The notes under the pieces were generated by a model, which worked only from the letters and a program-made list of their open reading frames with translations, made no database searches and was not told where the DNA came from. Made by a program: the position numbers and the translations under genes. This document shows positions 25,544 to 42,664 of a stretch of 64,000 bases of DNA, one piece after another (within the stretch, counting starts at the first letter, position 1; each line of letters starts with the position of its first letter). The stretch spans positions 434,001 to 498,000 of IMG/VR virus record IMGVR_UViG_3300028654_000001; one strand, given 5' to 3'.

Positions 25544-25620
25544 TGGTAGCCCCGATACGACTTGAACGTACAAAACCTCCCGCTTGTAGGGCGGGCGCTC
25601 TACCCTTGAGCTACGGGGCC
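25544..25620 (-). tRNA. tRNA-Val(TAC)
   Basis: CC TAC AA loop, CCA. Confidence 0.88.
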
Positions 25621-26399
25621 GTAAGTGATTGAGCTTGATTTGGTAAATGGTGTCTACCCCCTGACCAGTACCCGCGAGGTGGGGTCTTTATATTAAACCG
25701 CGTACACATGCGCTTCACAGCAACACCTGAAACACCAATAAGTTTTGAAACTTTAGCTACTGGATTTGACCAGACCAAGTTCCGGAGAACTTCAGGACTC
25801 GGCCAACTTCCCTTTCTTGGACGTCTAGGTGATCCATTAGAGTTCCTACAAGAAGACGAGCAGTACTCAGTAGTAACTTGACCGTTCTGCCTCTGCTTGG
25901 CCTGAAACTCAGAATGGCATACAACACAACCTATCGTAATATACTTAGAATTACTAGAAGTTGGCATCTGAGAGTGGCAGTTAGGGCATAGGAACCTGAG
26001 GTTAGAAGGAACATTATTAGCCCAAATCCCATCAATATGATCAACCTCCAGAGTCAACTTCTTCCCTTTCCAAACAGGAGAGCAGTTACACTCACTACAA
26101 ATGTAGGGAACCCCAGATTCAATCAGAGCGTTCCGTAACCTACGCCCACTCTGGCGATACTTGGCGTTGTAGACCAAGATGGCTTTCCAGTCTTTCCGGG
26201 CATGGAGTCCTCTTTCACAATAACGATTACCAACGAAATGTGAATGGTCTATCTCAAACAAATCAAGTCTACCACGTAAGTAGGTGCTCATCCCCCCTGA
26301 GTAAGATCCAATACCCAGATAACGAAGAACATCTGCCATATTATGAGACCTCAGAGCCGCTTCAGTTAGTAACTCTTTGGTGTACTGGGATCGTTTCAT
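25611..26399 (-). CDS. HNH homing endonuclease; stop lies inside tRNA-Val
   Basis: LEVDHIDG...NNVPSNLRFLCPNCH; C-terminal HTH. Confidence 0.88.
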   Translation of the reverse strand: MKRSQYTKELLTEAALRSHNMADVLRYLGIGSYSGGMSTYLRGRLDLFEIDHSHFVGNRYCERGLHARKDWKAILVYNAKYRQSGRRLRNALIESGVPYICSECNCSPVWKGKKLTLEVDHIDGIWANNVPSNLRFLCPNCHSQMPTSSNSKYITIGCVVCHSEFQAKQRQNGQVTTEYCSSSCRNSNGSPRRPRKGSWPSPEVLRNLVWSNPVAKVSKLIGVSGVAVKRMCTRFNIKTPPRGYWSGGRHHLPNQAQSLTAP

Positions 26400-26463
26400 A
26401 GTAGAGATCCTAGCACAAGAGAAGATATGTTTCTACTCTCAGAAGTTAGCAGTATTAGTGTAG

Positions 26464-26537
26464 TGCTGAAAGAGGGACTCGAACCCTCAACCTACGGCTT
26501 ATGAAACCGTCGCTCTAGCCTGTTGAGCTACATCAGC
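26464..26537 (-). tRNA. tRNA(CAT), elongator Met or Ile2
   Basis: TT CAT AA loop. Confidence 0.88.
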
Positions 26538-26548
26538 ATGAAGAGAGG

Positions 26549-26737
26549 TTACGCCAAACCTCTACTCTTTAGCTTGAATATCACCTGCATGACAGCAGGG
26601 TCATCCTTGCTTGGTAACTTGATCTTGTGCAGGATCTTGTACTTACCACTAGAATCAGTGGTATCTTGACGTTCGTCACTAGGACTCGACTGGCCTCGCA
26701 GCCAAGAGTCATTCTTTGGGTCAAACTTAATGTTCAT
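26549..26737 (-). CDS. Hypothetical protein
   Basis: Coupled to upstream gene by ATGA overlap. Confidence 0.5.
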   Translation of the reverse strand: MNIKFDPKNDSWLRGQSSPSDERQDTTDSSGKYKILHKIKLPSKDDPAVMQVIFKLKSRGLA

Positions 26738-27924
26738 ATAACCCGCCCCTCATGAGCCCCACCCACAACCAATATTTCAGCCTCAGTCTCGAGCTCTGGG
26801 TGTGTGATATTTGACATCAAGACTTTTTCTACTGGGATCTTAAATTCAAGTGCGGTGCCAAAGGCGGATGCACGAGAAGAATCGTAACTGAAAGACGAGA
26901 TGGACCTTGTGTCCAAACTGGCTTCCTGCCCTTTTTTAGACTTCTCGAGCCCTTGACCTTGAACCCCTCTGAACAGAGTTAGCTCTTTGATCCCCAAGTG
27001 CTTGTAGTAGGCCTGAGAGAAGTCATAGGCATCTTGTAGGTACTTCTTGAGTTCTTTGCTTTTAGCCCCATCCTCACGGAATCCCTTAGCTTCATCCTCA
27101 TCCTCTTTTGGAGTACGAGATCCACTAACCCCCCAGGATTCAACCGCTCCAACCATATTCTGAACAGACTCTGAATCAGCAAAGTCTCCCGCGATCCTCC
27201 ACCCAGCAACAGCACCCCTACCGACTTTTTGAGCCTCAGCATCCTTTTTCGACAGGTATTGCTGGAAGTACTCGCCGAGTTTATCGCCACCAGCCCATAG
27301 AGCTTGTTCCTGAGGGCTGAGACGATCAAAGGCCTTCTTAAACTTGTTAGGATACTGATCCCCAGGAGATCTCTTCTTCATATGGGCACTCTTGAAGGAC
27401 TTGACTGCCTTAGTCATCTCAGCAGTGATCCTATCAAAGTGCTCCTTGTTTTCTGCTATGATCGCATCAAGTTTTTTGGCATCAGGCTTAAATGGATTGG
27501 TTGATACCTCTTCGTCGGAGTCACCCTTTGGTTTTGCCTCTGAAACTGGTTCCTTAGTTTCAGGCTTTTTATCATCCTGATCTTCAGGATCCTTTGACCT
27601 GCCACCAGAGGTGTCCTCTTCCTTCTGCTTGCCAAGCCACTCATAGTACTCTTTTATGGCCTTAGAGTAGAAGCTAGGGTTCTTCAAAGCAGTACTAAAG
27701 GAGACTTCCTTGTTCTTCTTACGAGAATCAGAATCGGAGCTCGGGTTGGGTACTCTTCGCTTACCACCCTCTTGAGTGGAATCTAACCACTCTTTCCACC
27801 TAGGAGGGATCTTACCCTTCTTTGAAGACTCTTCACCTTCCTCCTCACCAGTGCTAAACGCAAGCTTGGTTTGGGCTCGAGCGTATCGAGCGGCAACACG
27901 AAGGATCAGGGCAGCTTCTGACAC
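26734..27924 (-). CDS. Protein with C-terminal ADP-ribosyltransferase-like (R-S-E) domain
   Basis: LFRGV, SISSFS, ETEAEILV; N-terminal RVAARY motif. Confidence 0.7.
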   Translation of the reverse strand: MSEAALILRVAARYARAQTKLAFSTGEEEGEESSKKGKIPPRWKEWLDSTQEGGKRRVPNPSSDSDSRKKNKEVSFSTALKNPSFYSKAIKEYYEWLGKQKEEDTSGGRSKDPEDQDDKKPETKEPVSEAKPKGDSDEEVSTNPFKPDAKKLDAIIAENKEHFDRITAEMTKAVKSFKSAHMKKRSPGDQYPNKFKKAFDRLSPQEQALWAGGDKLGEYFQQYLSKKDAEAQKVGRGAVAGWRIAGDFADSESVQNMVGAVESWGVSGSRTPKEDEDEAKGFREDGAKSKELKKYLQDAYDFSQAYYKHLGIKELTLFRGVQGQGLEKSKKGQEASLDTRSISSFSYDSSRASAFGTALEFKIPVEKVLMSNITHPELETEAEILVVGGAHEGRVI

Positions 27925-27953
27925 ACAAGTTCAACCCTATAAGTCAATTAGAT

Positions 27954-28030
27954 TGGCACCCCCAGAAGAACTCGAATCTTCAACCTCTGGCTTCGAAGGC
28001 CAACGCTCTATCCAATTGAGCTATAGGGGC
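27954..28030 (-). tRNA. tRNA-Arg(TCG)
   Basis: Cloverleaf, CCA. Confidence 0.9.
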
Positions 28031-28034
28031 ATGA

Positions 28035-28367
28035 CTAACGGGAACGATTACTACAGTGGATGCTACCACCGGCATTGGCATTCCCATGAATATCTTGACA
28101 GTTGACGCTACCACCCGCGCTAGCTGATCCCTGGATGTTCTCAGCATGAACACTCCCTCCAGCACTCACGTTACCCGCGACATCTCCACAAGTGACAGAC
28201 CCGTCAGCACGAAGGTTGACGAGAGGGGCTTCCCAGTTGATGTTGACAACACCTTGAAGACCACCCTCTACCACCACCCCATCGATAGAGACTACCCCGT
28301 CGATTACCGAAAGGTTGGAGCCAGAGGGGCTTTCTATACGCTTACCGTTGATTACAATTACAGGCAT
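28035..28367 (-). CDS. Gly-rich beta-helix-like small protein
   Basis: AGGSV repeats; ATG 28367 preceded by GGTGTA. Confidence 0.7.
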   Translation of the reverse strand: MPVIVINGKRIESPSGSNLSVIDGVVSIDGVVVEGGLQGVVNINWEAPLVNLRADGSVTCGDVAGNVSAGGSVHAENIQGSASAGGSVNCQDIHGNANAGGSIHCSNRSR

Positions 28368-28387
28368 AGCCAGTAATACACCGTAGT

Positions 28388-28464
28388 TGGCGATCCTGGG
28401 GAGACTCGAACTCCCGACGTTTTGATTCGGAATCAAAGACTCTATCCAACTGAGCTACAGGATC
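28388..28464 (-). tRNA. tRNA-Arg(CCG)
   Basis: TT CCG AA, CCA. Confidence 0.9.
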
Positions 28465-28466
28465 AT

Positions 28467-28542
28467 TGGTGTCCACAGGTGGGATCGAACCACCGGCCTC
28501 TCGGTTCGCAGCCGAACGCTCTATCCTCTGAGCTATGCGGAC
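28467..28542 (-). tRNA. tRNA-Arg(GCG)
   Basis: ttcgg-CT GCG AA-ccgag, CCA. Confidence 0.9.
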
Positions 28543-28579
28543 ATGTTAGTAACGGGGTACCGCTACTAACTTGACCTAG

Positions 28580-29089
28580 CTAGTAGCGGTAGAGTTGAGC
28601 CTCTAGGGGAACAGTATCCTTACTGAAGGTTCCCTCTTGACCCTCAGGAATCAGTACAATACTGAGATCTGGAATACTCCTCGAGAGGAACACCTCGGTA
28701 CTCCAAAGGAGACCTTGCAGACCAGACCTCAGGAACTCTATCTTCGTCTCTGGGGTGAAGATATCCCTACAATGCTTACGAACATTGCAGAAAGTACTTG
28801 CAGTCATCCAAACCCGGCTCACTCTCTTATCTAACCGCTCAACTGAAAGGAAAGCGTCAGCAATTAAGTCAGGAGTGAGTAGGGTAGGAGTTGTAAGAGA
28901 TCTCTCGAAACAATGAAGGGCTTCCTTCAAGTGTTCGAGACCCTTATCTTGCATCGGGTTCTTGTTGGTCTTCTTACCAACATTAGTAGCCAGCAAGAGG
29001 AAGTCCCCTCTCATCTGATTGATGATCTCGAGCTGGCTGTCAGTGAATAACTTCTTCGGGCCAAAAACAGACTGAATATCTAAAGGCAT
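28580..29089 (-). CDS. Hypothetical protein
   Basis: SD GGAGG, 169 aa. Confidence 0.7.
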   Translation of the reverse strand: MPLDIQSVFGPKKLFTDSQLEIINQMRGDFLLLATNVGKKTNKNPMQDKGLEHLKEALHCFERSLTTPTLLTPDLIADAFLSVERLDKRVSRVWMTASTFCNVRKHCRDIFTPETKIEFLRSGLQGLLWSTEVFLSRSIPDLSIVLIPEGQEGTFSKDTVPLEAQLYRY

Positions 29090-29116
29090 GATAACCTCCA
29101 GAACTCAAATACACCA

Positions 29117-29192
29117 TGGTACCTCCGGCAGGATTCGAACCTGCAATAAACAGTTTAGAAAACTGCGAGTCTATCCGTTGACCTACGGAGGC
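29117..29192 (-). tRNA. tRNA-Arg(TCT)
   Basis: TT TCT AA, CCA. Confidence 0.9.
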
Positions 29193-29198
29193 ATGAAC

Positions 29199-29756
29199 TC
29201 AAACAACGAATCCGCCCAGGTTCCCAGCCATGAGCTCTTCATAGTCATACGTCTTTCCAAGACAATCCTTGATGGTAACATCCTTGGTTCCGAACCCCAT
29301 GAGATGCCCATCGTAGATTAGGATCTTGTCCGGTACCTTGGACTCACACCGAACGAACTTCTGACCTCTCTCGGTGATTCGGTACCGACCCGTCATGTCG
29401 ACAACGGGCTTGTTACTCAAGACCGACTTCTTCACCGGCTGGTGCTCTTCAATGAGCTTCCAGCACTTGAGCTTGGACCACTCTCCGCCACGGACCTCAG
29501 ACCCGACTGCAGCCATGTTCTCGAGGTACTTGGACACGTGAAGCCAATCCTCCGGAGTGTCCAGGAAGTGTCGGTACATCAAGATGAGTACGTAGGCCAT
29601 CGTTGGGGATAAGTCCTTCTCGAGCACCCTCACCAACTGCTTGCAACAAGGGCAGATGACTCCAGAGCCCCGGACCCTTTGCTGCATCTGCTCCTGAGCT
29701 TTTGCAACCGTAGTGGTCTTAGGGTCAAGGTTGATCTCGAAGGGCTTCTTCGGCAT
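29199..29756 (-). CDS. Hypothetical protein (CPCC, winged-helix-like YRITERG)
   Basis: 185-aa ORF, upstream GGTGTA. Confidence 0.7.
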   Translation of the reverse strand: MPKKPFEINLDPKTTTVAKAQEQMQQRVRGSGVICPCCKQLVRVLEKDLSPTMAYVLILMYRHFLDTPEDWLHVSKYLENMAAVGSEVRGGEWSKLKCWKLIEEHQPVKKSVLSNKPVVDMTGRYRITERGQKFVRCESKVPDKILIYDGHLMGFGTKDVTIKDCLGKTYDYEELMAGNLGGFVV

Positions 29757-29781
29757 GCGATGTGATTACACCTAAAAGATC

Positions 29782-29883
29782 AGGAGAGACAAGAAGAGCG
29801 AAAAGAGTGCTCACCTAATGAGCTACCCACCCGAAGGCGGCTACGGAGTTGAACCATTGTACTTCTCGCGGGCATTCTCCCCT
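29782..29883 (-). ncRNA. Y RNA-like (YrlA-type) gene with permuted tRNA domain
   Basis: GGAGAAUGC...AGUACAAU...CUUGUCUCUCC; T arm, UUCG-closed acceptor, D arm. Confidence 0.75.
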
Positions 29884-29887
29884 TTAG

Positions 29888-29959
29888 AGCGGGTAACCAG
29901 ACTCGAACTGGTGACATTCAACTTGGAAGGATGACGTTCTACCACTGAACTATACCCGC
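29888..29959 (-). tRNA. tRNA-Gly(TCC)
   Basis: Cloverleaf. Confidence 0.9.
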
Positions 29960-29964
29960 ATTAG

Positions 29965-30036
29965 AGTCGAGGATGAGATTCGAACTCACATACAACGGTT
30001 TTGCAAACCGCCCCCTGACCATTCGGGCACCTCGAC
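29965..30036 (-). tRNA. tRNA-Cys(GCA)
   Basis: TT GCA AA, U73. Confidence 0.9.
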
Positions 30037-30047
30037 GTAATGTATAG

Positions 30048-30120
30048 AGCGGGCGATCGGGATCGAACCGACCAGATCCTGATTGGCAACCAGGTACCTC
30101 ACCGTTGAGGAGTCACCCGC
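30048..30120 (-). tRNA. tRNA-Gly(GCC)
   Basis: Cloverleaf. Confidence 0.88.
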
Positions 30121-30122
30121 AC

Positions 30123-30157
30123 AAAAAGAAGGAAGCCCGGTTCTCACTAGGCTTCCT
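30123..30157 (-). terminator. Intrinsic terminator inside the array
   Basis: GGAAGCCT/GGGCTTCC stem followed by TTCTTTTT. Confidence 0.55.
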
Positions 30158-30228
30158 ACAGGGGCGAACCGGTTTCCCAGTTTTGCCCTCCACCACGGAT
30201 TACCCACGTTTTACGGGGTTATCTCCGG

Positions 30229-30301
30229 AGCCCACACCCGGACTTGAACCGGGCACCCCGTCCTTACCAAGGACGTGCTCTACCAAATGAGCTATGCGGG
30301 C
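30229..30301 (-). tRNA. tRNA-Thr(GGT)
   Basis: Cloverleaf. Confidence 0.9.
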
Positions 30302-30302
30302 A

Positions 30303-30617
30303 TTATGACTTACGGTTAGGGAACTTTGACTTGGGGTTGACTGAGAACCCCAAAAGAAGGTTGTGGTCATTATCATCGTAGTTCCCGCAAAGGTACCCAA
30401 CCTCGGTACCCGGGATGGTCCCTATGACCCCATTGAGGAGGCCTAGGATGCTAAGAGTGGTTCGGTTAGCCACCCGAACTTGAACCGTAGGGTGATCTGC
30501 TAGGACCTCATTCGCCGGAACTCGATGGGCGAACAAGGCCTTGATGGCCTCAGGATCAATCTGAAAGTATTCATTGAGGCACTTCACAATGTGCTCTGCT
30601 AGCTCTATCTGATCCAT
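30303..30617 (-). CDS. Hypothetical phage protein (LADHPTVQV, LGLLNG)
   Basis: ATG 30617 after GGTGTA. Confidence 0.7.
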   Translation of the reverse strand: MDQIELAEHIVKCLNEYFQIDPEAIKALFAHRVPANEVLADHPTVQVRVANRTTLSILGLLNGVIGTIPGTEVGYLCGNYDDNDHNLLLGFSVNPKSKFPNRKS

Positions 30618-30635
30618 GATAACCAGATACACCAG

Positions 30636-30708
30636 AGCGGGAAAAGGGACTCGAACCCTCGACATTTTGGTTGGGAACCAAGTACTCTACCAACTGAGTT
30701 ACTCCCGC
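30636..30708 (-). tRNA. tRNA-Gly(CCC)
   Basis: Cloverleaf. Confidence 0.9.
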
Positions 30709-30712
30709 AAAA

Positions 30713-31264
30713 TCAGATCTTCTTCTCGATCTCTTCCCACACCTCGAGTGCGGCCTGAGTCCTCTTCATATCAGCTTCTGACTCAGGCCTAGGTATGCCA
30801 TTGATCTCAAAGACAGCGGTAGCGGAGATCAATGCTTTGAGCAACTTGATTTTCTGCTTGGTGAAAGCCTTGAGAACCTTGAAGTCAGCTTTGGGGAAAG
30901 CTTCTACGAAGTCCAGGACATCCGTCTCGTCCGTGTACTCAGTGATGGCTGCCCAAGTCACATGCTCCTGATTGTCCAAGTACATGCACGCGGCTATCAT
31001 CACGTAGGTACTTGCCTTGGGCTTGTTCCACGTACCAGGACGAGCCTTCGGATTCATTGTCTGACTACAGAATCGCCACCCTTTCTTTGGAGCATACTCG
31101 AGCCAGTAACGAATGGTTGTTCGAAGCTTGAACCCATAGGGGTAGTCATTGACGAAGTACCCATTCTCCTTGCTGTCGTAGCCATACAGGGGCTTGCCAA
31201 ACTTGTTGGCAAGCTTGACTGTTTGCAGATACCCCTTTATGACCCGAGCAACTAGAAGATCCAT
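30713..31264 (-). CDS. Hypothetical protein (DYPYGFKLRT)
   Basis: 183-aa ORF between tRNAs; N-terminal RV motif. Confidence 0.7.
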   Translation of the reverse strand: MDLLVARVIKGYLQTVKLANKFGKPLYGYDSKENGYFVNDYPYGFKLRTTIRYWLEYAPKKGWRFCSQTMNPKARPGTWNKPKASTYVMIAACMYLDNQEHVTWAAITEYTDETDVLDFVEAFPKADFKVLKAFTKQKIKLLKALISATAVFEINGIPRPESEADMKRTQAALEVWEEIEKKI

Positions 31265-31292
31265 ACCTGATTGATTGAGATAAGAGGATTAG

Positions 31293-31366
31293 AGCTGACG
31301 AGGAGAATCGAACTCCTAACCCCTGGTTTACAAAACCAGAGCTCTACCGGATTGAGCTACATCAGC
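31293..31366 (-). tRNA. tRNA-Thr(TGT)
   Basis: Cloverleaf. Confidence 0.9.
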
Positions 31367-31501
31367 ATTGGGTTACTATTGCCAGTGGATTATCCCCGTT
31401 CTGGCCCGGAGTAACCACCGGTATTGGCAGCGATTGTACATTACTCTCTAGGTTCACGCGTAGTACCCAGATCATCTGGCCTAAGGCATTGCCAGATCCA
31501 G

Positions 31502-31574
31502 TGGATCGGAGGAGAGTTGAACTCCTGCTCTCTCCCGTGCGAGGGGAGCGTTTTCCCAATTAAACTACCGACCC
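31502..31574 (-). tRNA. tRNA-Ala(CGC)
   Basis: CT CGC AC; G3:U70. Confidence 0.88.
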
Positions 31575-31586
31575 CATGAAGTTTAG

Positions 31587-31686
31587 TGCCGAGTGCATTG
31601 CCGAGTCGAACGGCTTCTCAATCCAGAGCGAGGGAGGAAATGAACCTCCACAGGGCGTCCCCTGCACGACCAATCATACACTCGAC
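31587..31686 (-). ncRNA. Unclassified tRNA-like RNA
   Basis: Long terminal stem GTCGAGTGTAT/ATGCACTCGGC, T arm gccg-TTCGACT-cggc, two internal hairpins. Confidence 0.5.
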
Positions 31687-31687
31687 A

Positions 31688-31764
31688 TGGTGGAAGTGAA
31701 GGGACTCGAACCCTCAACCTTTGGCTTGCAAAGCCACTGCTCTCCCAAATTGAGCTACACCCCC
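31688..31764 (-). tRNA. tRNA-Ala(TGC)
   Basis: Cloverleaf, G3:U70, CCA. Confidence 0.92.
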
Positions 31765-31767
31765 ATA

Positions 31768-31977
31768 TTACTGGTCAACAATCTCTACTTCACTCTCTTT
31801 CCACCAGTAGAGTGGAAAGTCCAACATCACATACCCTATGTAAGGTGGGTGATTTGGCATACTTGTAACAACTCGTGTACTGGGTAATGGCTTTTCGATA
31901 TCAAGCCCATTACGTAACAGGTAGTTATTCCAGGCCTCGGGTTTAATCTTTACGAGTGTACCTACTGAAAGATCCAT
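31768..31977 (-). CDS. Hypothetical protein
   Basis: GGTGTA upstream. Confidence 0.6.
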   Translation of the reverse strand: MDLSVGTLVKIKPEAWNNYLLRNGLDIEKPLPSTRVVTSMPNHPPYIGYVMLDFPLYWWKESEVEIVDQ

Positions 31978-32175
31978 ACGGATCTATACACCATATCAGT
32001 GATAATTATCAGGACGCTGACAACTACTATCATGATGAAGATACTCACCTTGATAGCACCAAGAATCACAGTAACCACAGACTTGAACGGTGGGTTCCTT
32101 TTTGGGTTCCGACTTATGTTCCTTCAAAATCTCTGCTTCCATGGTAACCTCAACTGAGTCACAAAAAAAGAAGAT

Positions 32176-35148: not shown

Positions 35149-35152
35149 ATAG

Positions 35153-36008: not shown

Positions 36009-36129
36009 ACCTAGAACCAGTACACCAAAAGAAGTATGTGGATTGAACCCCACGACGCATCTCAAGCCACCCCTCACCACTCTTCACCCAGACCCTGATG
36101 ATGTCTCCTTTGGCTAGAGGACTTTTAGG

Positions 36130-36420
36130 TTACCTATTAGGCTTACTCTTGAACTTTGCAGCAAGTCTTCGAGCTGCATCCAAGAAAGAATTATCGTTAT
36201 TGTCTGAAGTCTCTGTTTTACCTTTACACTCTAATAGATAACCATCAGTAACTGAGGTGACTTTGGTTGGTCCAATAACGATTTGAAGTGCTTGCTTGGC
36301 CGCCTCCCGGATCCCCTTGCTCCGTCGAATAACCTCATACTCCTGATCGAACGTTGTCTCTAGGTTATGCTTAGCTGCAAACCTAGAGACAACGTTGGAG
36401 ATACTAACCACGTCTTCCAT
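36130..36420 (-). CDS. Hypothetical protein with NVVSRFAA motif
   Basis: CTTATAGG motif upstream. Confidence 0.6.
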   Translation of the reverse strand: MEDVVSISNVVSRFAAKHNLETTFDQEYEVIRRSKGIREAAKQALQIVIGPTKVTSVTDGYLLECKGKTETSDNNDNSFLDAARRLAAKFKSKPNR

Positions 36421-36463
36421 AACAAGGAAATCCTATAAGTGAGAAATTGACTGAACCATAAGT

Positions 36464-36541
36464 TGGGGTGATGTACGGGTATCGAACCCGCCAATATAAG
36501 GGCCACGACCTTACCCCGTCACCATGCTGGGTCACACCACC
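36464..36541 (-). tRNA. tRNA-His(GTG)
   Basis: G-1:C73, CCA. Confidence 0.88.
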
Positions 36542-36563
36542 ATAAAGTTGTTAGGGATTAATC

Positions 36564-37433
36564 TCAGGGGTTGAGCCCAAGACGTTCTGGATGAGGTTCC
36601 CAAGAAGTTAGTTTACTGCTAACCAAAGCACGGACACTGGATACCTCTCGAATCTGAGCTTTTTCATGGCTTATAACCATCTCCCGGTAGCGTTCCCAAT
36701 CTACAGGAGAGGTATCTTTTCTAGTGTAGGCCTTCAGGAATCCGATGACTAAAGTGTCTTCCTCATCTCGTTCAAGTCTGCCGAGTCGAACATTGAGATC
36801 CTTCAGAAAAGAGTCCAATTGGATGAGGTACTCTTTGGTTCCTTCAGCACTAAGCTCGAAAGGTGGCCACCCGTTACCGAAACACTCCCCTTGAAGGTAC
36901 CCTGTCCCAGGACGTTTGTATCCGTGAAGAACGACCCCGGGCATTGACCGATCACCCTTCTTGGCTCTTGGAAGCAGCATGAAGGGTCTGAAACAACACG
37001 GACAGGTTGCCCTGCCAACTCGAGCCCTCTCCTCACGCTCTTGCTTCTTCCTCTCGGTCTCAGCTTCGTAGGACTCCATCTGCAGAGCTTCGAGTACTTG
37101 ATCCTGGAAGTGATTCTTCGTCAACCACTTCTCTAGGGTCTCACCCTCAGCGTTTCGAATGATGAATAGGTACTCCCTCCCGATGTAATCGAAGAAGACT
37201 CCAGTCTCGAATACAGCTCCGTTTGGGGCAGTGAACTTGGTTCCTCCCCTGAGGGGCTCGATTGTCCAACCAAGATAGTCGAAGACTGGCCATAGCTCCT
37301 TGAGTGTTTTCCCTAGCTTTGGATTCTTTCGAACCCAGAGTAAGAGCTTTGTCATCTTCTCTGGATCCAGAGGTCTCTTACGAGCAGCCGCTTGAAAACG
37401 ACGGGCCACTCTCTGGACAATAGGATCTTCCAC
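36564..37433 (-). CDS. Hypothetical protein (CPCC...HGY...C) with RVARRF motif
   Basis: 289 aa, CTTATAGG upstream. Confidence 0.7.
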   Translation of the reverse strand: MEDPIVQRVARRFQAAARKRPLDPEKMTKLLLWVRKNPKLGKTLKELWPVFDYLGWTIEPLRGGTKFTAPNGAVFETGVFFDYIGREYLFIIRNAEGETLEKWLTKNHFQDQVLEALQMESYEAETERKKQEREERARVGRATCPCCFRPFMLLPRAKKGDRSMPGVVLHGYKRPGTGYLQGECFGNGWPPFELSAEGTKEYLIQLDSFLKDLNVRLGRLERDEEDTLVIGFLKAYTRKDTSPVDWERYREMVISHEKAQIREVSSVRALVSSKLTSWEPHPERLGLNP

Positions 37434-37471
37434 ACCAAGAAGTACCCTATAAGTGAAACTTGATCAAGTAG

Positions 37472-37554
37472 CGGAAGAGAGCAGAGTCGAACTGCGGTCC
37501 TTACGGGCATCCAGGTTTCCAAGCTGGCGGGCGACCACTCACCCCATCCCTTCC
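37472..37554 (-). tRNA. tRNA-Ser(GGA)
   Basis: Class II, TT GGA AA. Confidence 0.8.
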
Positions 37555-38061
37555 ATTTGTCCGATTACCCACACCACAAGTCCAAGAACCAAATAAACCA
37601 GACTCTCGAACTAATCGAAGAAATGGACTCAATAGAATCCAAGCCTCATAAGGCATATCTCTTCTTATGTAGTTACATCGTATACAACACGGTATTACAT
37701 TGGACTCAAGATGCCCAAGTGAGTTACCTCTACGATCCAAAGTCATTTTAAGTGAGGTCTCACCACAATACTGACACTCTTGTGAGATTAACTTCTCGAT
37801 AATCTCTTTGGTCAAGTCATTTGACCGCCCTGCCCTCCTATCTGACTGTTTAGAGTCCTTGAGTATGAACCCGGATCTGAATCTAGGATTAGCTCTTCGA
37901 TCCCGATCAAGTCTATTATACATATCCCTAATTCGTTGGTTATCTCGATAGATCTTAGCAGTACCCTCCTTCTTCAAGTAGTAGCACTTCCTACAGACAG
38001 CACTCTTATCGTAAAAAGGCTCATCTGGGGTTTCTTCTTTACCACAAGAGCAGACTCGCAT
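37501..38061 (-). CDS. HNH-like endonuclease ending inside tRNA-Ser(GGA)
   Basis: CQYCG, LDR...GH...NVIPCCIRCN; ATG 38061 after GGTGTA. Confidence 0.8.
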   Translation of the reverse strand: MRVCSCGKEETPDEPFYDKSAVCRKCYYLKKEGTAKIYRDNQRIRDMYNRLDRDRRANPRFRSGFILKDSKQSDRRAGRSNDLTKEIIEKLISQECQYCGETSLKMTLDRRGNSLGHLESNVIPCCIRCNYIRRDMPYEAWILLSPFLRLVRESGLFGSWTCGVGNRTNGRDGVSGRPPAWKPGCP

Positions 38062-38077
38062 ACTAAAGTTACACCAG

Positions 38078-38162
38078 CGGAAGGCAGACGATTCGAACGC
38101 CATAGTGTTACCTACGCACCGCTCAGCAGGCGGGCTCCAGACCAGATCCAGATTTACCTTCC
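38078..38162 (-). tRNA. tRNA-Ser(GCT)
   Basis: Class II, CT GCT GA. Confidence 0.82.
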
Positions 38163-38335
38163 ATAAAGTTTGGCAGGATCTCATTATTGGGTGCGCACCC
38201 TCAGAAATCTTGCTGGATCGGACCCTCAAGACCGACTGCCATTCAGCTTCCGCTTCCCTCATCTTACAAGAGTTCAGCAGCTTCAGCCCAAGTCAGGTAA
38301 CAGAGGTAAGATGATCCCTGATGATTCGGGCTTAG

Positions 38336-38423
38336 CGGAAAGTGTAGGAATCGAACCCTTACCCCTTACGAGGTACCCACCAGTTTTCGAAGCTGGTTGC
38401 CATCCGGTTAGCTGGCACCTTCC
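38336..38423 (-). tRNA. tRNA-Ser(CGA)
   Basis: Class II, TT CGA AA. Confidence 0.85.
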
Positions 38424-38436
38424 GTAAAATTGTGAT

Positions 38437-39207
38437 CTAAATCTCGAGATCATCTAAAAGAGACTCTAGGTCACCTTGGATGTACTCGAAGATCGACTGG
38501 TTGCCATCAAAGTACTTAGTCACACCCTGACCAACCTTGGTCTCTACTACATCAGTGCTAATCTCTTCAAAGTTAGATGGAAGTGCATCCTCCCACTCAT
38601 CATAGTTAGTAGGAAGGTTGTGTATCCACTCCTTGAAGAAAGCGAAACTACCGTAATCATGGTCAGAAGGTGAGAAGTCTGGGATGTAGCTATGAACCTG
38701 ATCCAGAGCCCTCTGTTGTTTAGAGAAGTCTAATGACTTCAACCAACTTAGATCCTCCTCTGTAGGAGCATCCTCAGGGAATGACCCAATACGATCTATC
38801 AGATCGTTCCGATCAAAATCAACAAGTACTTTGGCTATAGGAGAATCATCAATATCACTGTAGATATCGTCAGCATTGAAGTCATATCGTTGAAGAAGAA
38901 GCCCGATTAGCTTAAGTTCTCGCTTGAGTTCTTTTTGTAGGTTGGGTAAGTCAGAGGGATCATCTATTAAAGACTTGAATCGATGAGTGTATTCCTTGTC
39001 TAACTTCTTCAACCTAGAATCAATGTCCAGGAGTTTTCTGGTCTTATCACTCAAGGGTTTCGAGTCGAACGCTTTACTCATGGTATCTAATAAAGAGAGA
39101 GGCCCCGATAGATTCCACTCCTTGAATGTATACCAAGCTAGATTGAGTCTTCGGACATCAACCGCAGCTTTATACCTAGCAACCACCCGAGAAACTAGAG
39201 AACTCAT
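38437..39207 (-). CDS. Acidic hypothetical protein with RVVARYKAA motif
   Basis: 256-aa ORF. Confidence 0.7.
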   Translation of the reverse strand: MSSLVSRVVARYKAAVDVRRLNLAWYTFKEWNLSGPLSLLDTMSKAFDSKPLSDKTRKLLDIDSRLKKLDKEYTHRFKSLIDDPSDLPNLQKELKRELKLIGLLLQRYDFNADDIYSDIDDSPIAKVLVDFDRNDLIDRIGSFPEDAPTEEDLSWLKSLDFSKQQRALDQVHSYIPDFSPSDHDYGSFAFFKEWIHNLPTNYDEWEDALPSNFEEISTDVVETKVGQGVTKYFDGNQSIFEYIQGDLESLLDDLEI

Positions 39208-39235
39208 ATTGTAGATCTGAATACGAAAAGAATAG

Positions 39236-39307
39236 TCGGGGTGGTCAGACTTGAACTGACGGCCTCATGCTCCCAAAGCACGCGATCTACCACTGATCTA
39301 CACCCCG
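39236..39307 (-). tRNA. tRNA-Pro(TGG)
   Basis: Cloverleaf. Confidence 0.9.
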
Positions 39308-39370
39308 GTAACGATTACTCTTCTAGCACTTGGAGGGCAGGGTACCACATTACCCATCAAGTGGTATTAG

Positions 39371-39454
39371 TGCATCAGAGAGGACTTGAACCTCCACGGG
39401 TATTACCCCACTTGCACCTCAAGCAAGCGTGTTTGCCAGTTACACCACTGATGC
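39371..39454 (-). tRNA. tRNA-Leu(GAG)
   Basis: Class II. Confidence 0.9.
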
Positions 39455-39511
39455 ATATGTTAGTAAGATATGTCTAGGAAACCAAAGGTTTAACCCAAAC
39501 AAAAAAAATTC

Positions 39512-39620
39512 AAGGAAAAAGCCGCTAAGTCACCCCTGACAAGGGGTGCATAAGACTCGTTTTCAACCATAGAATGTAGTCCCACACAGTATTCAGGGGC
39601 TACTTAGCGGCTATTTCCTT
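39512..39620 (-). ncRNA. Minimal Y RNA-like gene with extended stem followed by a U tract
   Basis: CCCCUGAAUAC...GGACUACAUUC...CUUGUCAGGGG inside a ~19-bp outer stem. Confidence 0.68.
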
Positions 39621-39624
39621 AAAA

Positions 39625-39860
39625 GTTTGACCTCGACAAGTGGTGACAGAGAGGGTTTTTGTGGCCTACACATTGATGGCCCATCTTTCGATGGGTGACA
39701 TCCGTTCGTCCCGAGCCTTCGGCTCCCGACTAGTCTAAGTAGACGAGAGTCTCTGAGCCCTTGTTAAAGGGGCTACTGGCTCCATCGCTAGTCCCTCACG
39801 GGGCATCGCTACCTTAGGACCGTTATCGATTGTACTCCTTGTCGGTATTCGAGGTCGAAC
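39625..39860 (-). ncRNA. Large (236 nt) Y RNA-like gene with multi-hairpin domain
   Basis: GACCUCGAAUAC...GGAGUACAAUC...CUUGUCGAGGUC; own GGTGTATA promoter. Confidence 0.72.
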
Positions 39861-39940
39861 GAGATATACACCGATCTGATACCCAAGTGCAATAGGGAAA
39901 GTTGTCGGGGTGAAAGGATCTTCAACCTAGGTCAGCTAAT

Positions 39941-40017
39941 TGGTCAGGGCAGCCAGAGTTGAACTGGCGATCTTGTGTTCCCGAAACACACGCTTTACCA
40001 GGCTAAGCTATACCCTG
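39941..40017 (-). tRNA. tRNA-Pro(CGG)
   Basis: TT CGG GA, CCA. Confidence 0.88.
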
Positions 40018-40527
40018 AAGAGATAATTTCCCCTCGTGCACCCCAGCGTGACAGTTTCTACATAAGAGCACACAATTTTGAAGTTCTTGCTCTATCCGTT
40101 GCCAAGACCAACCCCTCCAACCTGAAAAGTTTGGGTCTTTCTTGCTAGGATCAAGGTGGTGCATATCTAGAGCTGACTTAAAAACATCAAACCCACAAAT
40201 ACGACAGTTACCACCGAGGTAAGCTATAACCTTACCCTTCTTTTCTTGACCCTTAGTTATGCAGTAATTATTGTGACACCTACCGCACACTTTTAGCTTA
40301 TGCCCATAAAACTTGGTGAGGTCGTCTTCACCACAGTATATACACTTGCGGGGTTTCCCATTAGGGTTTGGATCATTCGGAAGTTTTCCATATGGGCCTC
40401 GTTTGGTATGAAGCTCATACTTATTAAGCCAATATCTAACATTTGTGAAAGAGGTGTTTAGATCTATGGCAATCTGCCTTACACTCTTCCATTGCTGAAG
40501 ATGTAGGATAAGAACTTCTTTTTCCAT
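40003..40527 (-). CDS. HNH endonuclease ending inside tRNA-Pro(CGG)
   Basis: N-terminal HTH, GGNCRICG, ALDMHHLDP, CVLLCRNCH. Confidence 0.85.
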   Translation of the reverse strand: MEKEVLILHLQQWKSVRQIAIDLNTSFTNVRYWLNKYELHTKRGPYGKLPNDPNPNGKPRKCIYCGEDDLTKFYGHKLKVCGRCHNNYCITKGQEKKGKVIAYLGGNCRICGFDVFKSALDMHHLDPSKKDPNFSGWRGWSWQRIEQELQNCVLLCRNCHAGVHEGKLSLQGIA

Positions 40528-40588
40528 TATTCAGAGTGTAGCTCAGATTAGTAAAGGTACCAGATTGAGCTATACCCTGATGAAAGTT

Positions 40589-40748
40589 GGCCGCTACTGG
40601 CGGGTTTCCCCGGCCAGTTACCAGAGCTTGCCTCTATCCGCTGCTTGCAACGGGGTCTACGGCAAGATGCCCAAGCCCGCGGTCTTTGCCAGGCTTGGAG
40701 ATTCAGCTAGCCCGGTCCTTGTAGAGGCCCGGATGATCATTGCTAGCC
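40589..40748 (-). ncRNA. Unclassified GC-rich multi-hairpin RNA
   Basis: Intergenic, GGCTAGC/GCGGCC ends, several stems including CGGG-GAAA-CCCG. Confidence 0.4.
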
Positions 40749-41111
40749 TTATGAAAGTTCTTTGGAATCGTGTAGTCGACGCATCTGAATCTCGGCAGTA
40801 TTCAGGGCGGCTTGGTAAACTGTGGATTCCCAGGGACTCAAGGACGCTTTATTTGGCTTGAACAAAGCCTTCTTCAAGAAGATCCCATCCATGCGGCCAC
40901 ATCTCTTGAGCTCGATTGGATTATCGATGATGAGGCCCAGAATGCCCATCGAGGCGTCCGAGGCCCCGCACCAAGAGTCATCCCCACTGTTATTGAAGAT
41001 GGCCCCAGAGAGGGCTATCTTACCGCACTGGAGGATGGTCAGGTGCCTCACCACAGGGGCGGGCATCCTAGCCAGGGTATCACCGATGAGGGTTCCTCGT
41101 TTGAGTGACAT
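40749..41111 (-). CDS. Hypothetical protein
   Basis: ATG 41111 after GGTGTATTAT. Confidence 0.6.
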   Translation of the reverse strand: MSLKRGTLIGDTLARMPAPVVRHLTILQCGKIALSGAIFNNSGDDSWCGASDASMGILGLIIDNPIELKRCGRMDGIFLKKALFKPNKASLSPWESTVYQAALNTAEIQMRRLHDSKELS

Positions 41112-41128
41112 GCTGAATAATACACCAG

Positions 41129-41202
41129 TCAGGGTAAATGGACTCGAACCATCGACCTCTTGCTCCCCGAGCAAGCGCTCTACCAAACTGAGCTACACCC
41201 TG
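41129..41202 (-). tRNA. tRNA-Pro(GGG)
   Basis: TC GGG GA. Confidence 0.88.
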
Positions 41203-41205
41203 ATA

Positions 41206-41349
41206 GTCACGAAGACAAGAATTCGAAAGAGAAACGTACGGCGTCTTGACCGCTAGACGACCCCCGCATAGGCTTGAGCGGAGGGAGGGATTCGAACCCC
41301 CGATATCCGGCTTGGATGGCAATGTACTCCTTCAGGCATTCTTCGTGGT
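41206..41349 (-). ncRNA. Y RNA-like gene with permuted tRNA domain
   Basis: CACGAAGAAUGC...GGAGUACAUU...CUUGUCUUCGUG; T arm, closed acceptor, D arm. Confidence 0.78.
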
Positions 41350-41955
41350 GGTTGGAGGCGGAGTTGAACCGCCGACACCTTGATTTTCAGTCAAGTGCTC
41401 TACCGACTGAGCTATCCAACCGTTAGGCAAATCAAAGTCAAGAAGATCTCCTTCATACCTCTCTGCCTCAGCAATAAGCAATGAGTCCTCTCTGGTTGAA
41501 TGCTCTATTCTGTGGCAACAAGAGCAGAGCAACTCACACTTCTCAAGTTCTTTCTTCAGTACACTCCAACTCTTGTTAGCTAAACCACCAAAGTTGAAGT
41601 CCTTATCACGTAGGTGGTGGAACTCAAAGGCTGACTGATGCCCAGACCACCCACACCTAATACATTTCCCACCCAGCATCTTGATCCCAGTAGCTTTAGC
41701 TCGATATCTACGGATCTTGGTGTTGCAAGAGTTGCATCTACGTCTACGACTACTCCCATTAAGTCTACCGCAAATCACACATGAGTCATACGTTGGTGAT
41801 TGAATCAACTCGACCCTAAGACCTGACTTGAATGGGACACAAGTAAGGCAAGCTCTTCTCCTGTTGAGAACCCTAATGGTACCATCAACAATGACCCGAT
41901 TAGGGAAGTTTACCTTGCATACTCGACAGGTAGGCATACCAAAAATATAGCACAA
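41332..41955 (-). CDS. HNH endonuclease reading through tRNA-Phe
   Basis: GGKCIRCG, FEFHH, KCELLCSCCH. Confidence 0.85.
   Translation of the reverse strand: MCYIFGMPTCRVCKVNFPNRVIVDGTIRVLNRRRACLTCVPFKSGLRVELIQSPTYDSCVICGRLNGSSRRRRCNSCNTKIRRYRAKATGIKMLGGKCIRCGWSGHQSAFEFHHLRDKDFNFGGLANKSWSVLKKELEKCELLCSCCHRIEHSTREDSLLIAEAERYEGDLLDFDLPNGWIAQSVEHLTENQGVGGSTPPPTTTKNA
41346..41421 (-). tRNA. tRNA-Phe(GAA)
   Basis: Cloverleaf, CCA. Confidence 0.92.
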
Positions 41956-41956
41956 T

Positions 41957-42042
41957 TGGTATCGGAGGAGGGACTCGAACCCTCAAGGGATTTCTCCCAG
42001 CAGTATTTGAAGCTGCCGCGTTTGCCTTTTCGCCACTCCGGC
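41957..42042 (-). tRNA. tRNA-Leu(CAA)
   Basis: Class II, CCA. Confidence 0.88.
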
Positions 42043-42048
42043 ATGTAG

Positions 42049-42130
42049 TACCCAAGGAGAGACTTGAACTCTCACGTCACAAGGACCACCGGTTCTGAGC
42101 CGGCGCTGTACGCCATTCCAGCACTTGGGC
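42049..42130 (-). tRNA. tRNA-Leu(CAG)
   Basis: Class II. Confidence 0.88.
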
Positions 42131-42132
42131 AT

Positions 42133-42205
42133 GGACCAGAGACAAGAAGTGCAGAGAGGGTGTTTTCTCCAATTGAATTGTACTCCCCACGAGCATTCTC
42201 TGGTT
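42133..42205 (-). ncRNA. Minimal Y RNA-like gene
   Basis: ACCAGAGAAUGC...GGAGUACAAU...CUUGUCUCUGGU. Confidence 0.72.
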
Positions 42206-42280
42206 TGGTCGGCCGAGGTGGACTTGAACCACCGTTACACGCGTATCAGGCGTAGATCCTAACCATTAGAAGACCGGCCG
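42206..42280 (-). tRNA. tRNA-Ile(GAT)
   Basis: tacgc-CT GAT AC-gcgtg, CCA; Gln/Glu-like D arm. Confidence 0.8.
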
Positions 42281-42664
42281 TCGTCGCATCCCATTGGTTC
42301 GATACCTGTGACAGAGAGCGCAAACAAGCTCACACTTGGCGATCTCCTCAAGTAATCTTTCAACGGAGGTGCATTTTGAATTTGCACGAGCTATCTCAAA
42401 AGACTTTGTTGTTGGGTCAAGATGATCAAAGTCCATAGCCCAGTAAGGGTGTGGCTCTCCACAATCTGTACAAGGCTTGCCACTCTTGGCCTCCTGGATG
42501 ACCCTCTTGATTTCAGCTCTGATCTTTACCTTATCCTTTCTAACTCTGGCACATTGACACAACTTGCAGTACCCCATGAGGTACTTACCCCTCCCGTGAA
42601 ACTCACGTTCGGACTTAGTTTGAGTGCAAGCCGGGCAATACTTGGTGCGCTTAGCTTTCGGTAT
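42266..42664 (-). CDS. HNH endonuclease ending inside tRNA-Ile; frame extends upstream to an ATA
   Basis: KYCPAC...YCKLC, PCTDCG, MDFDHLDP, KCELVCALCH. Confidence 0.75.
   Translation of the reverse strand: MPKAKRTKYCPACTQTKSEREFHGRGKYLMGYCKLCQCARVRKDKVKIRAEIKRVIQEAKSGKPCTDCGEPHPYWAMDFDHLDPTTKSFEIARANSKCTSVERLLEEIAKCELVCALCHRYRTNGMRRRPVF

What the first reader, a model, noticed from the sequence alone, without database searches (positions are those of the whole stretch)
25611..42664. Six HNH-type nucleases whose coding sequence ends in or reads through the next tRNA
Seen: nuclease ORFs overlap Val(TAC), Ala(GGC), Ser(GGA), Pro(CGG), Phe and Ile(GAT), whereas ordinary cargo genes stop before the tRNA. 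Known: T4 SegB promotes homing of tRNA regions. Inference: each nuclease travels with a cleavage-resistant allele of its target tRNA gene, and tRNA processing would truncate the nuclease mRNA and limit its expression.
Basis: partly seen in the sequence, partly recalled or inferred. Interest (0 to 1): 0.6.

Follow-up and report, generated by a model that had tools for sequence, protein, structure and literature searches.

The report
Homing nucleases wedged against phage tRNAs
Six selfish HNH nuclease genes sit flush against tRNA genes in the tRNA array of a 512-kb soil phage, each running into the next tRNA before it meets a stop codon; this is a larger, well-documented example of an arrangement already present in phages T5 and T4.

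Summary
All six minus-strand ORFs are HNH or EndoVII-type nucleases. Each has its stop codon inside the downstream tRNA (Val, Ser, Pro-cgg, Ile-gat) or beyond it (Ala-ggc, Phe). All 13 non-nuclease ORFs that precede a tRNA stop 1-54 nt before it (Fisher p = 4e-5).

Syntenic arrays in related jumbo phages show that the six are mobile insertions:
- Four slots have HNH-free versions (Ile, Ala, Phe, Val). In phage B the Phe slot instead holds an unrelated antisense HNH.
- The Ala insertion lies exactly in the 2-nt spacer between a stop codon and the tRNA.
- HNH-Pro is missing from phage B together with Pro(cgg) and Leu(gag).
- A 2,348-bp tract around HNH-Ser/tRNA-Ser is 100% identical in a co-occurring phage that is otherwise about 80% identical.

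The "resistant tRNA allele" idea is not supported at Ala. It has only one hint, at Pro.

The "tRNA processing limits expression" idea is plausible but untested. It was already proposed for T4 SegB and the T5 F-Tfl nucleases. The T5 record itself annotates F-TflI and F-TflII as overlapping tRNAs.

Verdict: a real feature and a new member of a known kind.

The parts
23935..45593 (-). tRNA array: 41 ARAGORN tRNAs plus a tmRNA (23935-24281), all on the minus strand. It is the only array in the 512,571-bp phage genome.
25611..26399 (-). HNH-Val nuclease (262 aa). It matches phrog_10822 and is homologous to T5 F-TflIV. Its TAG stop is formed by tRNA-Val(tac) positions 8-10.
25544..25620 (-). tRNA-Val(tac). 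In relative L068 it lies 22 nt after tRNA-Met with no nuclease between.
32404..32901 (-). HNH-Ala nuclease (165 aa; the last ~30 aa are encoded by tRNA-Ala(ggc) and its trailer).
32499..32943 (-). Insertion of about 445 nt carrying HNH-Ala. Phage B has only 2 nt here, between the TAA of the upstream ORF and the tRNA 5' end.
32423..32496 (-). tRNA-Ala(ggc). It is 96% identical to the HNH-free allele and differs only at positions 32, 38 and 69.
37501..38262 (-). HNH-Ser nuclease (253 aa, endonuclease VII-like, phrog_1035). Its stop lies in the variable arm of tRNA-Ser(gga).
37471..37554 (-). tRNA-Ser(gga), a weak Rfam tRNA match (29.8 bits).
38337..38423 (-). tRNA-Ser(cga)-like gene missed by ARAGORN in the window. 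It lies 74 nt upstream of HNH-Ser. ARAGORN calls it tRNA-Ser(cga) in L064 and L071.
37023..39370 (-). 2,348-bp tract that is 100% identical to phage B. It covers Pro(tgg), ORF256, the Ser(cga)-like gene, HNH-Ser, Ser(gga) and the 5' part of ORF289. The next-longest exact match in 20.8 kb is 80 bp.
40003..40527 (-). HNH-Pro nuclease (174 aa, phrog_2255; Pfam HNH above its cut-off). Its TAG stop is at tRNA-Pro(cgg) positions 13-15.
39941..40017 (-). tRNA-Pro(cgg). It is absent from phage B, together with HNH-Pro and Leu(gag).
39371..41040 (-). Block of about 1.67 kb present here and skipped in phage B contigs. It holds HNH-Pro, Pro(cgg), a 486-nt ORF-less stretch and Leu(gag).
40558..40579 (-). 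22-nt copy of tRNA-Pro positions 1-22 (19/22 identical). It forms the 5' arm of a strong hairpin (z = -4.6) that ends 4 nt before the HNH-Pro ATG.
41332..41955 (-). HNH-Phe nuclease (207 aa from TTG; likely start ATG 41937). It fills the whole Leu(caa)-Phe spacer and reads through tRNA-Phe.
41346..41421 (-). tRNA-Phe(gaa). In L068 it lies 4 nt after Leu(caa). In phage B the same spacer holds an unrelated antisense HNH.
42266..42685 (-). HNH-Ile nuclease open frame (139 codons, phrog_2255). It has no canonical start before 42577. Its TAA stop is at tRNA-Ile(gat) positions 13-15.
42668..42696 (-). 9-bp-stem hairpin at the 5' end of the HNH-Ile frame. A shorter version sits before the ATG of the L032 homologue.
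42206..42280 (-). tRNA-Ile(gat). Phage B has a different Ile(gat) (67% identical) 8 nt after Leu(taa), with no nuclease.

Best explanation
The six ORFs are free-standing HNH-type homing endonuclease genes from at least three families. They have colonised the spacers of this jumbo phage's tRNA array.

Each sits flush against the 5' end of a tRNA gene and has no stop codon of its own. Translation therefore ends at the first chance stop inside or beyond the tRNA.

Shown here: the nuclease identity, the overlaps, presence/absence among syntenic relatives, the exact insertion point at Ala, and a recent transfer tract around HNH-Ser between two phages that share samples.

Inferred:
- They cut HNH-free arrays at or near the adjoining tRNA gene and are copied in by repair.
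- Immunity of the carrier comes mainly from the insertion splitting the target, not from a changed tRNA.
- If the array is transcribed as a precursor, RNase P cleavage at the tRNA 5' end removes the stop codon. The resulting non-stop message would be poorly expressed, which keeps nuclease levels low.
For: Identity and overlap:
- PHROG/Pfam matches and intact motifs.
- HNH-Val and HNH-Ala are homologous to T5 F-TflIV (E = 5e-13 and 1e-12).
- Overlap contrast of 6/6 against 0/13, p = 3.7e-5.
- HNH-like genes are concentrated in the array: about 8 of about 15 lie in 4.5% of the genome, p = 8e-8.

Mobility:
- Phage B (L030/L031/L063) lacks HNH-Ile, HNH-Ala and the HNH-Pro block.
- L068 has none of the six. 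There, Leu(caa) and Phe are 4 nt apart, and Met and Val(tac) are 22 nt apart.
- L067 and L071 lack HNH-Ser. L064 has a copy with a 57-nt deletion over the start and two 1-nt indels.
- The Ala insertion sits exactly in the 2-nt spacer between the stop codon and the tRNA.
- A 2,348-bp exact tract surrounds HNH-Ser, against 66-89% identity in the other aligned segments; the next exact match is 80 bp.
- Both phages occur in the same rhizosphere samples.

Link to tRNAs:
- The three closest relatives of HNH-Phe all sit next to tRNA-Phe.
- Two of the top three relatives of HNH-Ile sit next to Ile(gat). One, L032, has the same HNH-into-tRNA overlap.
- Relatives of HNH-Val sit next to Val or Leu(tag).

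Stop codons and regulation:
- The stops fall as expected for random frames: 32% of tRNA-frame combinations read through, and 2 of 6 do here. So the ORFs simply lack their own stop.
- Hairpins at or before the start codon occur in 4 of 6, as reported for T4 homing endonuclease genes.
Against: - No cleavage, transcript or protein data exist. No RNA run holds the phage.
- Promoter and terminator scans were no different from shuffled sequence, so co-transcription is assumed, not shown.
- In other phage arrays the contrast is weaker. There, 13/25 homing-nuclease ORFs and 7/31 other ORFs overlap the next tRNA, p = 0.03. Overlap is therefore not exclusive to nucleases.
- Homologues of HNH-Pro and HNH-Ala show no link to the same isoacceptor.
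- HNH relatives lie on either side of the cognate tRNA, so the cut site cannot be placed.
- HNH-Ile lacks a canonical start and may be inactive.
Confidence: 0.7

Rival explanations
1. Neutral by-product. The nucleases are mobile, but the run-on into the tRNA has no function. In an array where every spacer is trimmed to a few bases, an inserted gene whose tail is dispensable loses its stop and ends at the next chance stop.
For: - Non-nuclease ORFs stop only 1-6 nt before tRNAs in 8 of 13 junctions, so compaction is extreme.
- Stop positions match random-frame expectation.
- The tRNA-encoded tails are not conserved. HNH-Pro and HNH-Ile end about 10 codons after the CxxCH motif, and their PHROG matches stop near profile position 173 of 211.
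- In other arrays, 7/31 non-nuclease ORFs also overlap a tRNA.
Against: - Within this genome, 13 of 13 ordinary ORFs keep their stop just upstream of the tRNA. This argues that losing it is selected against for genes the phage needs.
- The HNH-into-Ile(gat) junction is kept between homologues that are only 57% identical.
Confidence: 0.35
2. Each nuclease targets the adjoining tRNA gene and is protected because it travels with a sequence-variant, uncuttable allele of that tRNA.
For: - The upstream 22-nt tRNA-Pro fragment differs from the live Pro(cgg) at three D-loop bases.
- The Ile(gat) linked to HNH-Ile is only 67% identical to the HNH-free Ile(gat) of phage B.
- HNH-Pro is present or absent together with Pro(cgg).
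Against: - The Ala(ggc) alleles with and without HNH are identical in the 5' 31 nt and differ at 3 of 74 positions.
- tRNAs beside homologous HNHs in other phages are no more alike than random pairs.
- Divergence of 63-93% is typical of all tRNAs in these arrays.
Confidence: 0.2
3. Domesticated helpers. The nucleases are kept because breaks in tRNA genes drive duplication, shuffling and amplification of array segments. This would let the phage adjust its tRNA supply or escape tRNA-targeting defences, as shown for SegB in T6.
For: - SegB cuts within tRNA genes and promotes segmental amplification of the tRNA locus under Septu pressure (PMC13096335).
- The arrays of this phage group are highly mosaic, with duplicated isoacceptors and patches of 100% identity among 63-90% neighbours.
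- One HNH (22659-23222) is conserved at 80% in L068.
Against: The six array nucleases are sporadic among relatives. One has lost its start codon, and one relative's copy is disrupted. This pattern fits selfish elements in an invade-and-decay cycle better than retained helpers.
Confidence: 0.15
4. Artefact or dead genes. The overlaps come from assembly errors, wrong tRNA boundaries or decayed pseudogenes.
For: - HNH-Ile lacks a canonical start.
- tRNA-Ser(gga) scores only 29.8 bits.
Against: - Two independent tRNA finders agree on the 5' ends.
- Contigs from other samples match the junctions exactly.
- Five of six ORFs have canonical starts and intact catalytic motifs.
- The same arrangement is annotated in phage T5.
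Confidence: 0.05

Closest known systems
Phage T5 HNH endonucleases F-TflI (hegC), F-TflII (hegD) and F-TflIV (hegA) in the T5 tRNA gene region
   Same: - They are free-standing HNH nuclease genes scattered among tRNA genes.
- In record AY543070, hegC ends 14 nt inside tRNA-Ser(GGA) and hegD ends 23 nt inside tRNA-Gln(CUG).
- F-TflIV is a sequence homologue of HNH-Val and HNH-Ala (E = 5e-13 and 1e-12).
- Lowering of expression through precursor processing was proposed for them (PMC2330249).
   Different: - Here there are six genes from at least three families, all six overlap, and two read through a whole tRNA.
- The host is a 512-kb environmental jumbo phage.
- Empty-site alleles and a transfer tract are documented here.
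- F-TflI and F-TflII show no significant similarity to the window's proteins, apart from a weak F-TflI match to HNH-Ala (E = 0.004).
Phage T4 SegB (GIY-YIG homing endonuclease in the tRNA cluster)
   Same: - It lies between tRNA genes.
- It cuts inside tRNA genes of the segB-less phage T2L and drags neighbouring tRNA genes along.
- Its authors proposed that tRNA-Arg maturation separates the last sense codon from the stop, and that a 5' hairpin hides the start (PMC2330249).
   Different: - It belongs to a different nuclease fold (GIY-YIG, not HNH).
- In T4 the stop codon lies 5 nt upstream of tRNA-Arg, so there is no overlap with the tRNA itself.
- There is one gene per array, not six.
Nuclease genes at boundaries of genetic exchange between phages (Barth et al. 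2023, PMC10448857)
   Same: A nuclease gene sits within a patch of very high identity between otherwise diverged phages. Here this is the 2,348-bp tract around HNH-Ser.
   Different: That study's text mentions tRNAs only as satellite integration sites and in citing the SegB paper.
tRNA punctuation of mitochondrial transcripts
   Same: ORFs abut or overlap tRNA genes, and tRNA excision defines the mRNA end. This comparison rests on my own knowledge and was not tested here.
   Different: In mitochondria this is the normal route to functional mRNAs. Here only the selfish genes cross the tRNA boundary, and the expected result is a message without a stop.

Membership tests
HNH / His-Me finger nuclease | beta-beta-alpha-metal motif with catalytic His, Asn and zinc-binding CxxC pairs | tested here: met
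   PHROG HNH or endonuclease VII matches for all six. Pfam HNH is above its cut-off for HNH-Pro. The motif is read directly in five. HNH-Ser is an endonuclease VII-like variant.
Free-standing homing endonuclease gene | Sporadic presence or absence at the same site in otherwise syntenic relatives | tested here: met
   Nuclease-free slots were found for Ile, Ala, Phe and Val. HNH-Ser is absent from three relatives whose local layout differs. The HNH-Pro block is absent in phage B.
Free-standing homing endonuclease gene | Gene-conversion tract that carries flanking markers | tested here: met
   A 2,348-bp exact tract surrounds HNH-Ser against 66-89% identity in the other aligned segments. One edge is abrupt and the other is graded. 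This was seen for one of the six only.
Free-standing homing endonuclease gene | Site-specific cleavage of the nuclease-free allele and biased inheritance in mixed infection | not testable with these tools
   This needs purified protein or a cultured phage and host.
tRNA-gene-targeting nuclease (SegB-like behaviour) | The recognition or cut site lies within a tRNA gene | tested here: inconclusive
   Relatives keep the same isoacceptor as a neighbour for Phe, Ile and Val, but not for Pro or Ala. There is one upstream tRNA-Pro 5' fragment. No such fragments were found at 24 other loci.
Processing-limited expression (model proposed for segB and F-Tfl) | The stop codon lies 3' of the tRNA 5' processing site | tested here: met
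   All six stops lie at tRNA position 8 or later.
Processing-limited expression (model proposed for segB and F-Tfl) | The nuclease ORF and tRNA are on one precursor, and processing lowers protein yield | not testable with these tools
   No RNA runs hold this phage. The promoter and terminator scan was uninformative.

The most novel reading that the evidence does not exclude
A general rule for phage tRNA arrays. Homing nuclease genes that invade them settle exactly at tRNA 5' ends and give up their own stop codons. tRNA maturation then automatically turns their mRNAs into non-stop messages, possibly cleared by the phage's own tmRNA. This would be a built-in throttle that lets many nucleases coexist in one array. 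Their breaks would in turn drive the mosaic turnover and expansion of jumbo-phage tRNA arrays.
Probability: 0.25. Interest if true: 0.6.

Novelty: new member of a known kind. Interest (0 to 1): 0.4.

Why it matters
tRNA arrays of large phages are strikingly mosaic, and how they are built is not well understood. This locus offers a natural series of filled and empty sites. It also has one fresh transfer tract between two phages that share rhizosphere samples. Together these tie array mosaicism to homing nucleases.

The locus gives six independent test cases, in three nuclease families, for an old and untested idea from T4 and T5: that tRNA maturation throttles selfish nuclease genes. If the nucleases prove to recognise specific tRNA genes, they would add new DNA specificities to the HNH family.

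Tried and rejected
- Megablast of the array against GenBank phages gave no match. A ribonucleotide-reductase-sized ORF gave only distant hits of 35% identity or less.
- The DRAT-like ORF 26734-27924 found no relatives in viral contigs.
- Sequence searches of HNH-Val, HNH-Ser and HNH-Phe against solved structures gave nothing below E = 0.3.
- I searched for tRNA 5' fragments upstream of the other five nucleases and of 24 nuclease ORFs in other phages. Only the Pro case stood out; the two other hits were T-arm similarities.
- I tested whether HNH-adjacent tRNAs are unusually diverged or travel with their nuclease. There was no such pattern.
- Start-region hairpins are strong for Pro and Val and present for Phe and Ile. 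They are not exceptional for Ala and Ser, and some ordinary ORFs also score low.
- The promoter and terminator scan did not differ from shuffles.
- Amber-codon recoding, suggested by a suppressor-type tRNA, has no support. TAG ends 23% of long ORFs.
- No strain-level HNH-minus variants of this same phage were seen in four other samples.

Full report
**Context.** The window is bases 434001-498000 of a 512,571-bp virus record with direct terminal repeats. Its GC content is 49%. The same contig is a JGI metagenome record (L062). It occurs in at least 15 rhizosphere metagenomes. The genome has a single tRNA array, with 41 tRNAs and a tmRNA, all on the minus strand at window 23935-45593. Rfam adds several tRNA-like genes that ARAGORN missed, and it confirms every tRNA 5' end used below.

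**Observation.** Six minus-strand ORFs match PHROG HNH or endonuclease VII families at E = 1e-14 to 1e-42. They fall into three groups by mutual similarity: Val with Ala; Pro, Phe and Ile together; and Ser alone. Five show the full zinc-knuckle plus His-Asn-His pattern.

None has a stop codon before the next tRNA. The stops are:
- TAG at Val positions 8-10.
- TAA at Ser positions 52-54.
- TAG at Pro(cgg) positions 13-15.
- TAA at Ile(gat) positions 13-15.
- For Ala(ggc) and Phe, the frame crosses the whole tRNA and stops 12-19 nt beyond it.

The 13 other ORFs that directly precede a tRNA or tRNA-like gene all stop 1-54 nt upstream of it, and eight of them stop within 6 nt. The contrast is 6/6 against 0/13, Fisher p = 3.7e-5. 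Across all tRNAs and frames in the array, 68% of frames meet a stop inside the tRNA and 32% read through. The six stops are therefore simply the first chance stops. The real peculiarity is that these ORFs lack a stop of their own. Contigs from other samples reproduce the Ser, Pro, Phe and Ile junctions exactly.

**Relatives.** Protein-guided scans recovered three kinds of syntenic array:
- Phage B (L030, L031 and L063, a 443-kb contig).
- A more distant relative, L068 (a 197-kb contig).
- Several fragments (L064, L066, L067, L071).

Slot by slot, the comparison gives the following.

*Ala.* In phage B the upstream ORF ends in TAA, followed by 2 nt and then the tRNA. The window has about 445 extra bases exactly there, carrying HNH-Ala. 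The two tRNAs differ at only 3 of 74 positions (32, 38 and 69).

*Ile.* Phage B has Leu(taa), 8 nt, then a different Ile(gat) that is 67% identical, with no nuclease.

*Pro.* A block of about 1.67 kb is absent from phage B. It holds HNH-Pro, Pro(cgg), an ORF-less 486 nt and Leu(gag). It is seen as a skip in phage B contigs from three samples.

*Phe.* L068 has Leu(caa), 4 nt, then Phe. Phage B has an unrelated, antisense HNH of the Val type in the same spacer.

*Val.* L068 has Met, 22 nt, then Val(tac). L066 has a tRNA-like 3' end about 7 nt before Val(tac).

*Ser.* HNH-Ser is identical in phage B and absent in L067, L068 and L071. In L064 it is disrupted by a 57-nt deletion over the start and by two 1-nt indels. 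The indels could be assembly errors.

**Recent transfer.** Where the window and phage B align, they are 66-89% identical across the array. The exception is window 37023-39370, which is identical at all 2,348 positions. The next-longest exact match in 20.8 kb is 80 bp. The tract begins abruptly at the 3' end of Leu(gag). It ends in a graded run of third-codon differences inside ORF289. It contains Pro(tgg), ORF256, the Ser(cga)-like gene, HNH-Ser and Ser(gga). Both phages occur in the same samples, with phage B about 30 times deeper in one of them. This is what a homing event with co-conversion of flanks would leave. Ordinary recombination cannot be excluded.

**Link to particular tRNAs.**
- The three closest viral-contig relatives of HNH-Phe all lie beside tRNA-Phe. 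Two are on its 3' side and one is antisense. My rough chance estimate for this is about 0.007.
- The best relative of HNH-Ile (L032, 57% identical, a 363-kb contig) also runs 35 nt into an Ile(gat). Another relative (L034) follows an Ile(gat).
- Relatives of HNH-Val adjoin Val(tac), Val(gac) or Leu(tag).
- Relatives of HNH-Pro and HNH-Ala show no such link.

The tRNAs next to homologous nucleases are not themselves similar to each other. Syntenic tRNAs between relatives vary from 63% to 100% identity regardless of nuclease neighbours. So I find no general support for a co-travelling resistant tRNA allele.

The one hint is at Pro. Thirty bases upstream of the HNH-Pro ATG lies a copy of tRNA-Pro positions 1-22. 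Its three D-loop differences from the live tRNA are the bases that form the nuclease's TAG. The copy also forms the 5' arm of a strong hairpin. This would fit a break in the D-loop region repaired with one-sided homology. However, no similar fragment was found at 24 other nuclease-tRNA junctions.

**Generality.** Among 61 fetched loci, which were chosen by HNH homology, homing-nuclease ORFs overlap the next tRNA in 13 of 25 cases and other ORFs in 7 of 31 (p = 0.03). Two of the "other" overlapping ORFs turned out to belong to a different homing endonuclease family, phrog_314. The overlap is thus common in phage arrays and enriched, but not exclusive, for nucleases.

**What is known.**
- The T5 record AY543070 annotates hegC (F-TflI) as ending 14 nt inside tRNA-Ser(GGA) and hegD (F-TflII) as ending 23 nt inside tRNA-Gln. 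F-TflIV is a homologue of HNH-Val and HNH-Ala.
[quoted passage not shown] It proposes that tRNA-Arg maturation cuts between the last sense codon and the stop codon. It notes that a similar control was proposed for T5 F-TflI and F-TflII, and it describes a start-occluding hairpin (PMC2330249).
- In T4 itself the stop lies 5 nt before the tRNA.
- A 2026 study shows that SegB breaks in tRNA genes drive amplification of the tRNA locus (PMC13096335).
- I found no paper that describes the overlap as a systematic feature.

**Mechanism.** I judge it most likely (about 0.7) that these are mobile homing nuclease genes lodged at tRNA 5' ends.

The expression throttle is geometrically sound. RNase P cleavage would leave a non-stop message, and the phage's tmRNA may then come into play. 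That every ordinary ORF keeps its stop just upstream of the tRNA suggests the boundary matters. Even so, the throttle rests on assumed co-transcription and has no direct evidence here. I give that step about 0.4. A neutral compaction by-product is the main rival.

**Verdict.** This is a real feature and a new, unusually rich member of a known kind. It is of moderate interest.

Noticed in passing
genome 498602-498674, about 600 nt beyond the window's right end: A lone amber-suppressor-type tRNA (anticodon CTA) lies outside the array. TAG still ends 23% of long ORFs, so there is no sign of recoding.
   Followed up: partly
window 35015-35148, 41206-41346, 29780-29882 (minus strand): Sub-threshold matches to the Y RNA-like family YrlA (41, 36 and 27 bits; gathering score 69). 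Each lies directly after a tRNA and fills an otherwise empty spacer.
   Followed up: no
window 36467-36541, 44569-44651, 45677-45760, 25162-25233 (minus strand): Further tRNA-like elements that ARAGORN did not call (weak tRNA-Sec-model matches, 25-39 bits). The array may hold more than 41 tRNA genes.
   Followed up: partly
window 26734-27924 (minus strand): A 396-aa ORF inside the array has a C-terminal match to the DRAT ADP-ribosyltransferase family (Pfam E = 1e-10). No relatives were found in viral contigs.
   Followed up: partly
window 27936-27944, 36432-36440, 37446-37454 (minus strand): The motif ACTTATAGG occurs three times (0.44 expected). Each copy lies just after a tRNA or tRNA-like gene and 12-20 nt before an ORF start. 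It may be a phage promoter or processing signal.
   Followed up: partly
window 39455-39940: A 486-nt stretch between Pro(cgg) and Leu(gag) with no minus-strand ORF of 45 aa or more and no convincing RNA family match. It belongs to the block missing from phage B.
   Followed up: no
immediately upstream of most tRNA 5' ends across 25244-45593: Positions -2 and -1 are AT (or AC) before most tRNAs. This fits a preferred RNase P context. The stops of ordinary ORFs sit just 5' of this dinucleotide.
   Followed up: no
window 22659-23222 and L068:19039-19584: An HNH gene just past the tmRNA is conserved at 80% amino-acid identity in the distant relative L068, unlike the six sporadic array nucleases.
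   Followed up: no
window 23935-24281: A phage-encoded tmRNA (96 bits) with an unusual predicted tag, VADLPRDSLGSG. It sits at the 3' end of the array that holds six ORFs with no stop codon before the predicted tRNA processing site.
   Followed up: no
L063 vs L062 and L066 vs L062 (tRNA by tRNA): Syntenic tRNAs of related phages range from 63% to 100% identity in a patchwork. For example, Arg(gcg) is 100% and Gly(gcc) 97% identical to L066. This suggests frequent small-scale exchange throughout the array.
   Followed up: partly
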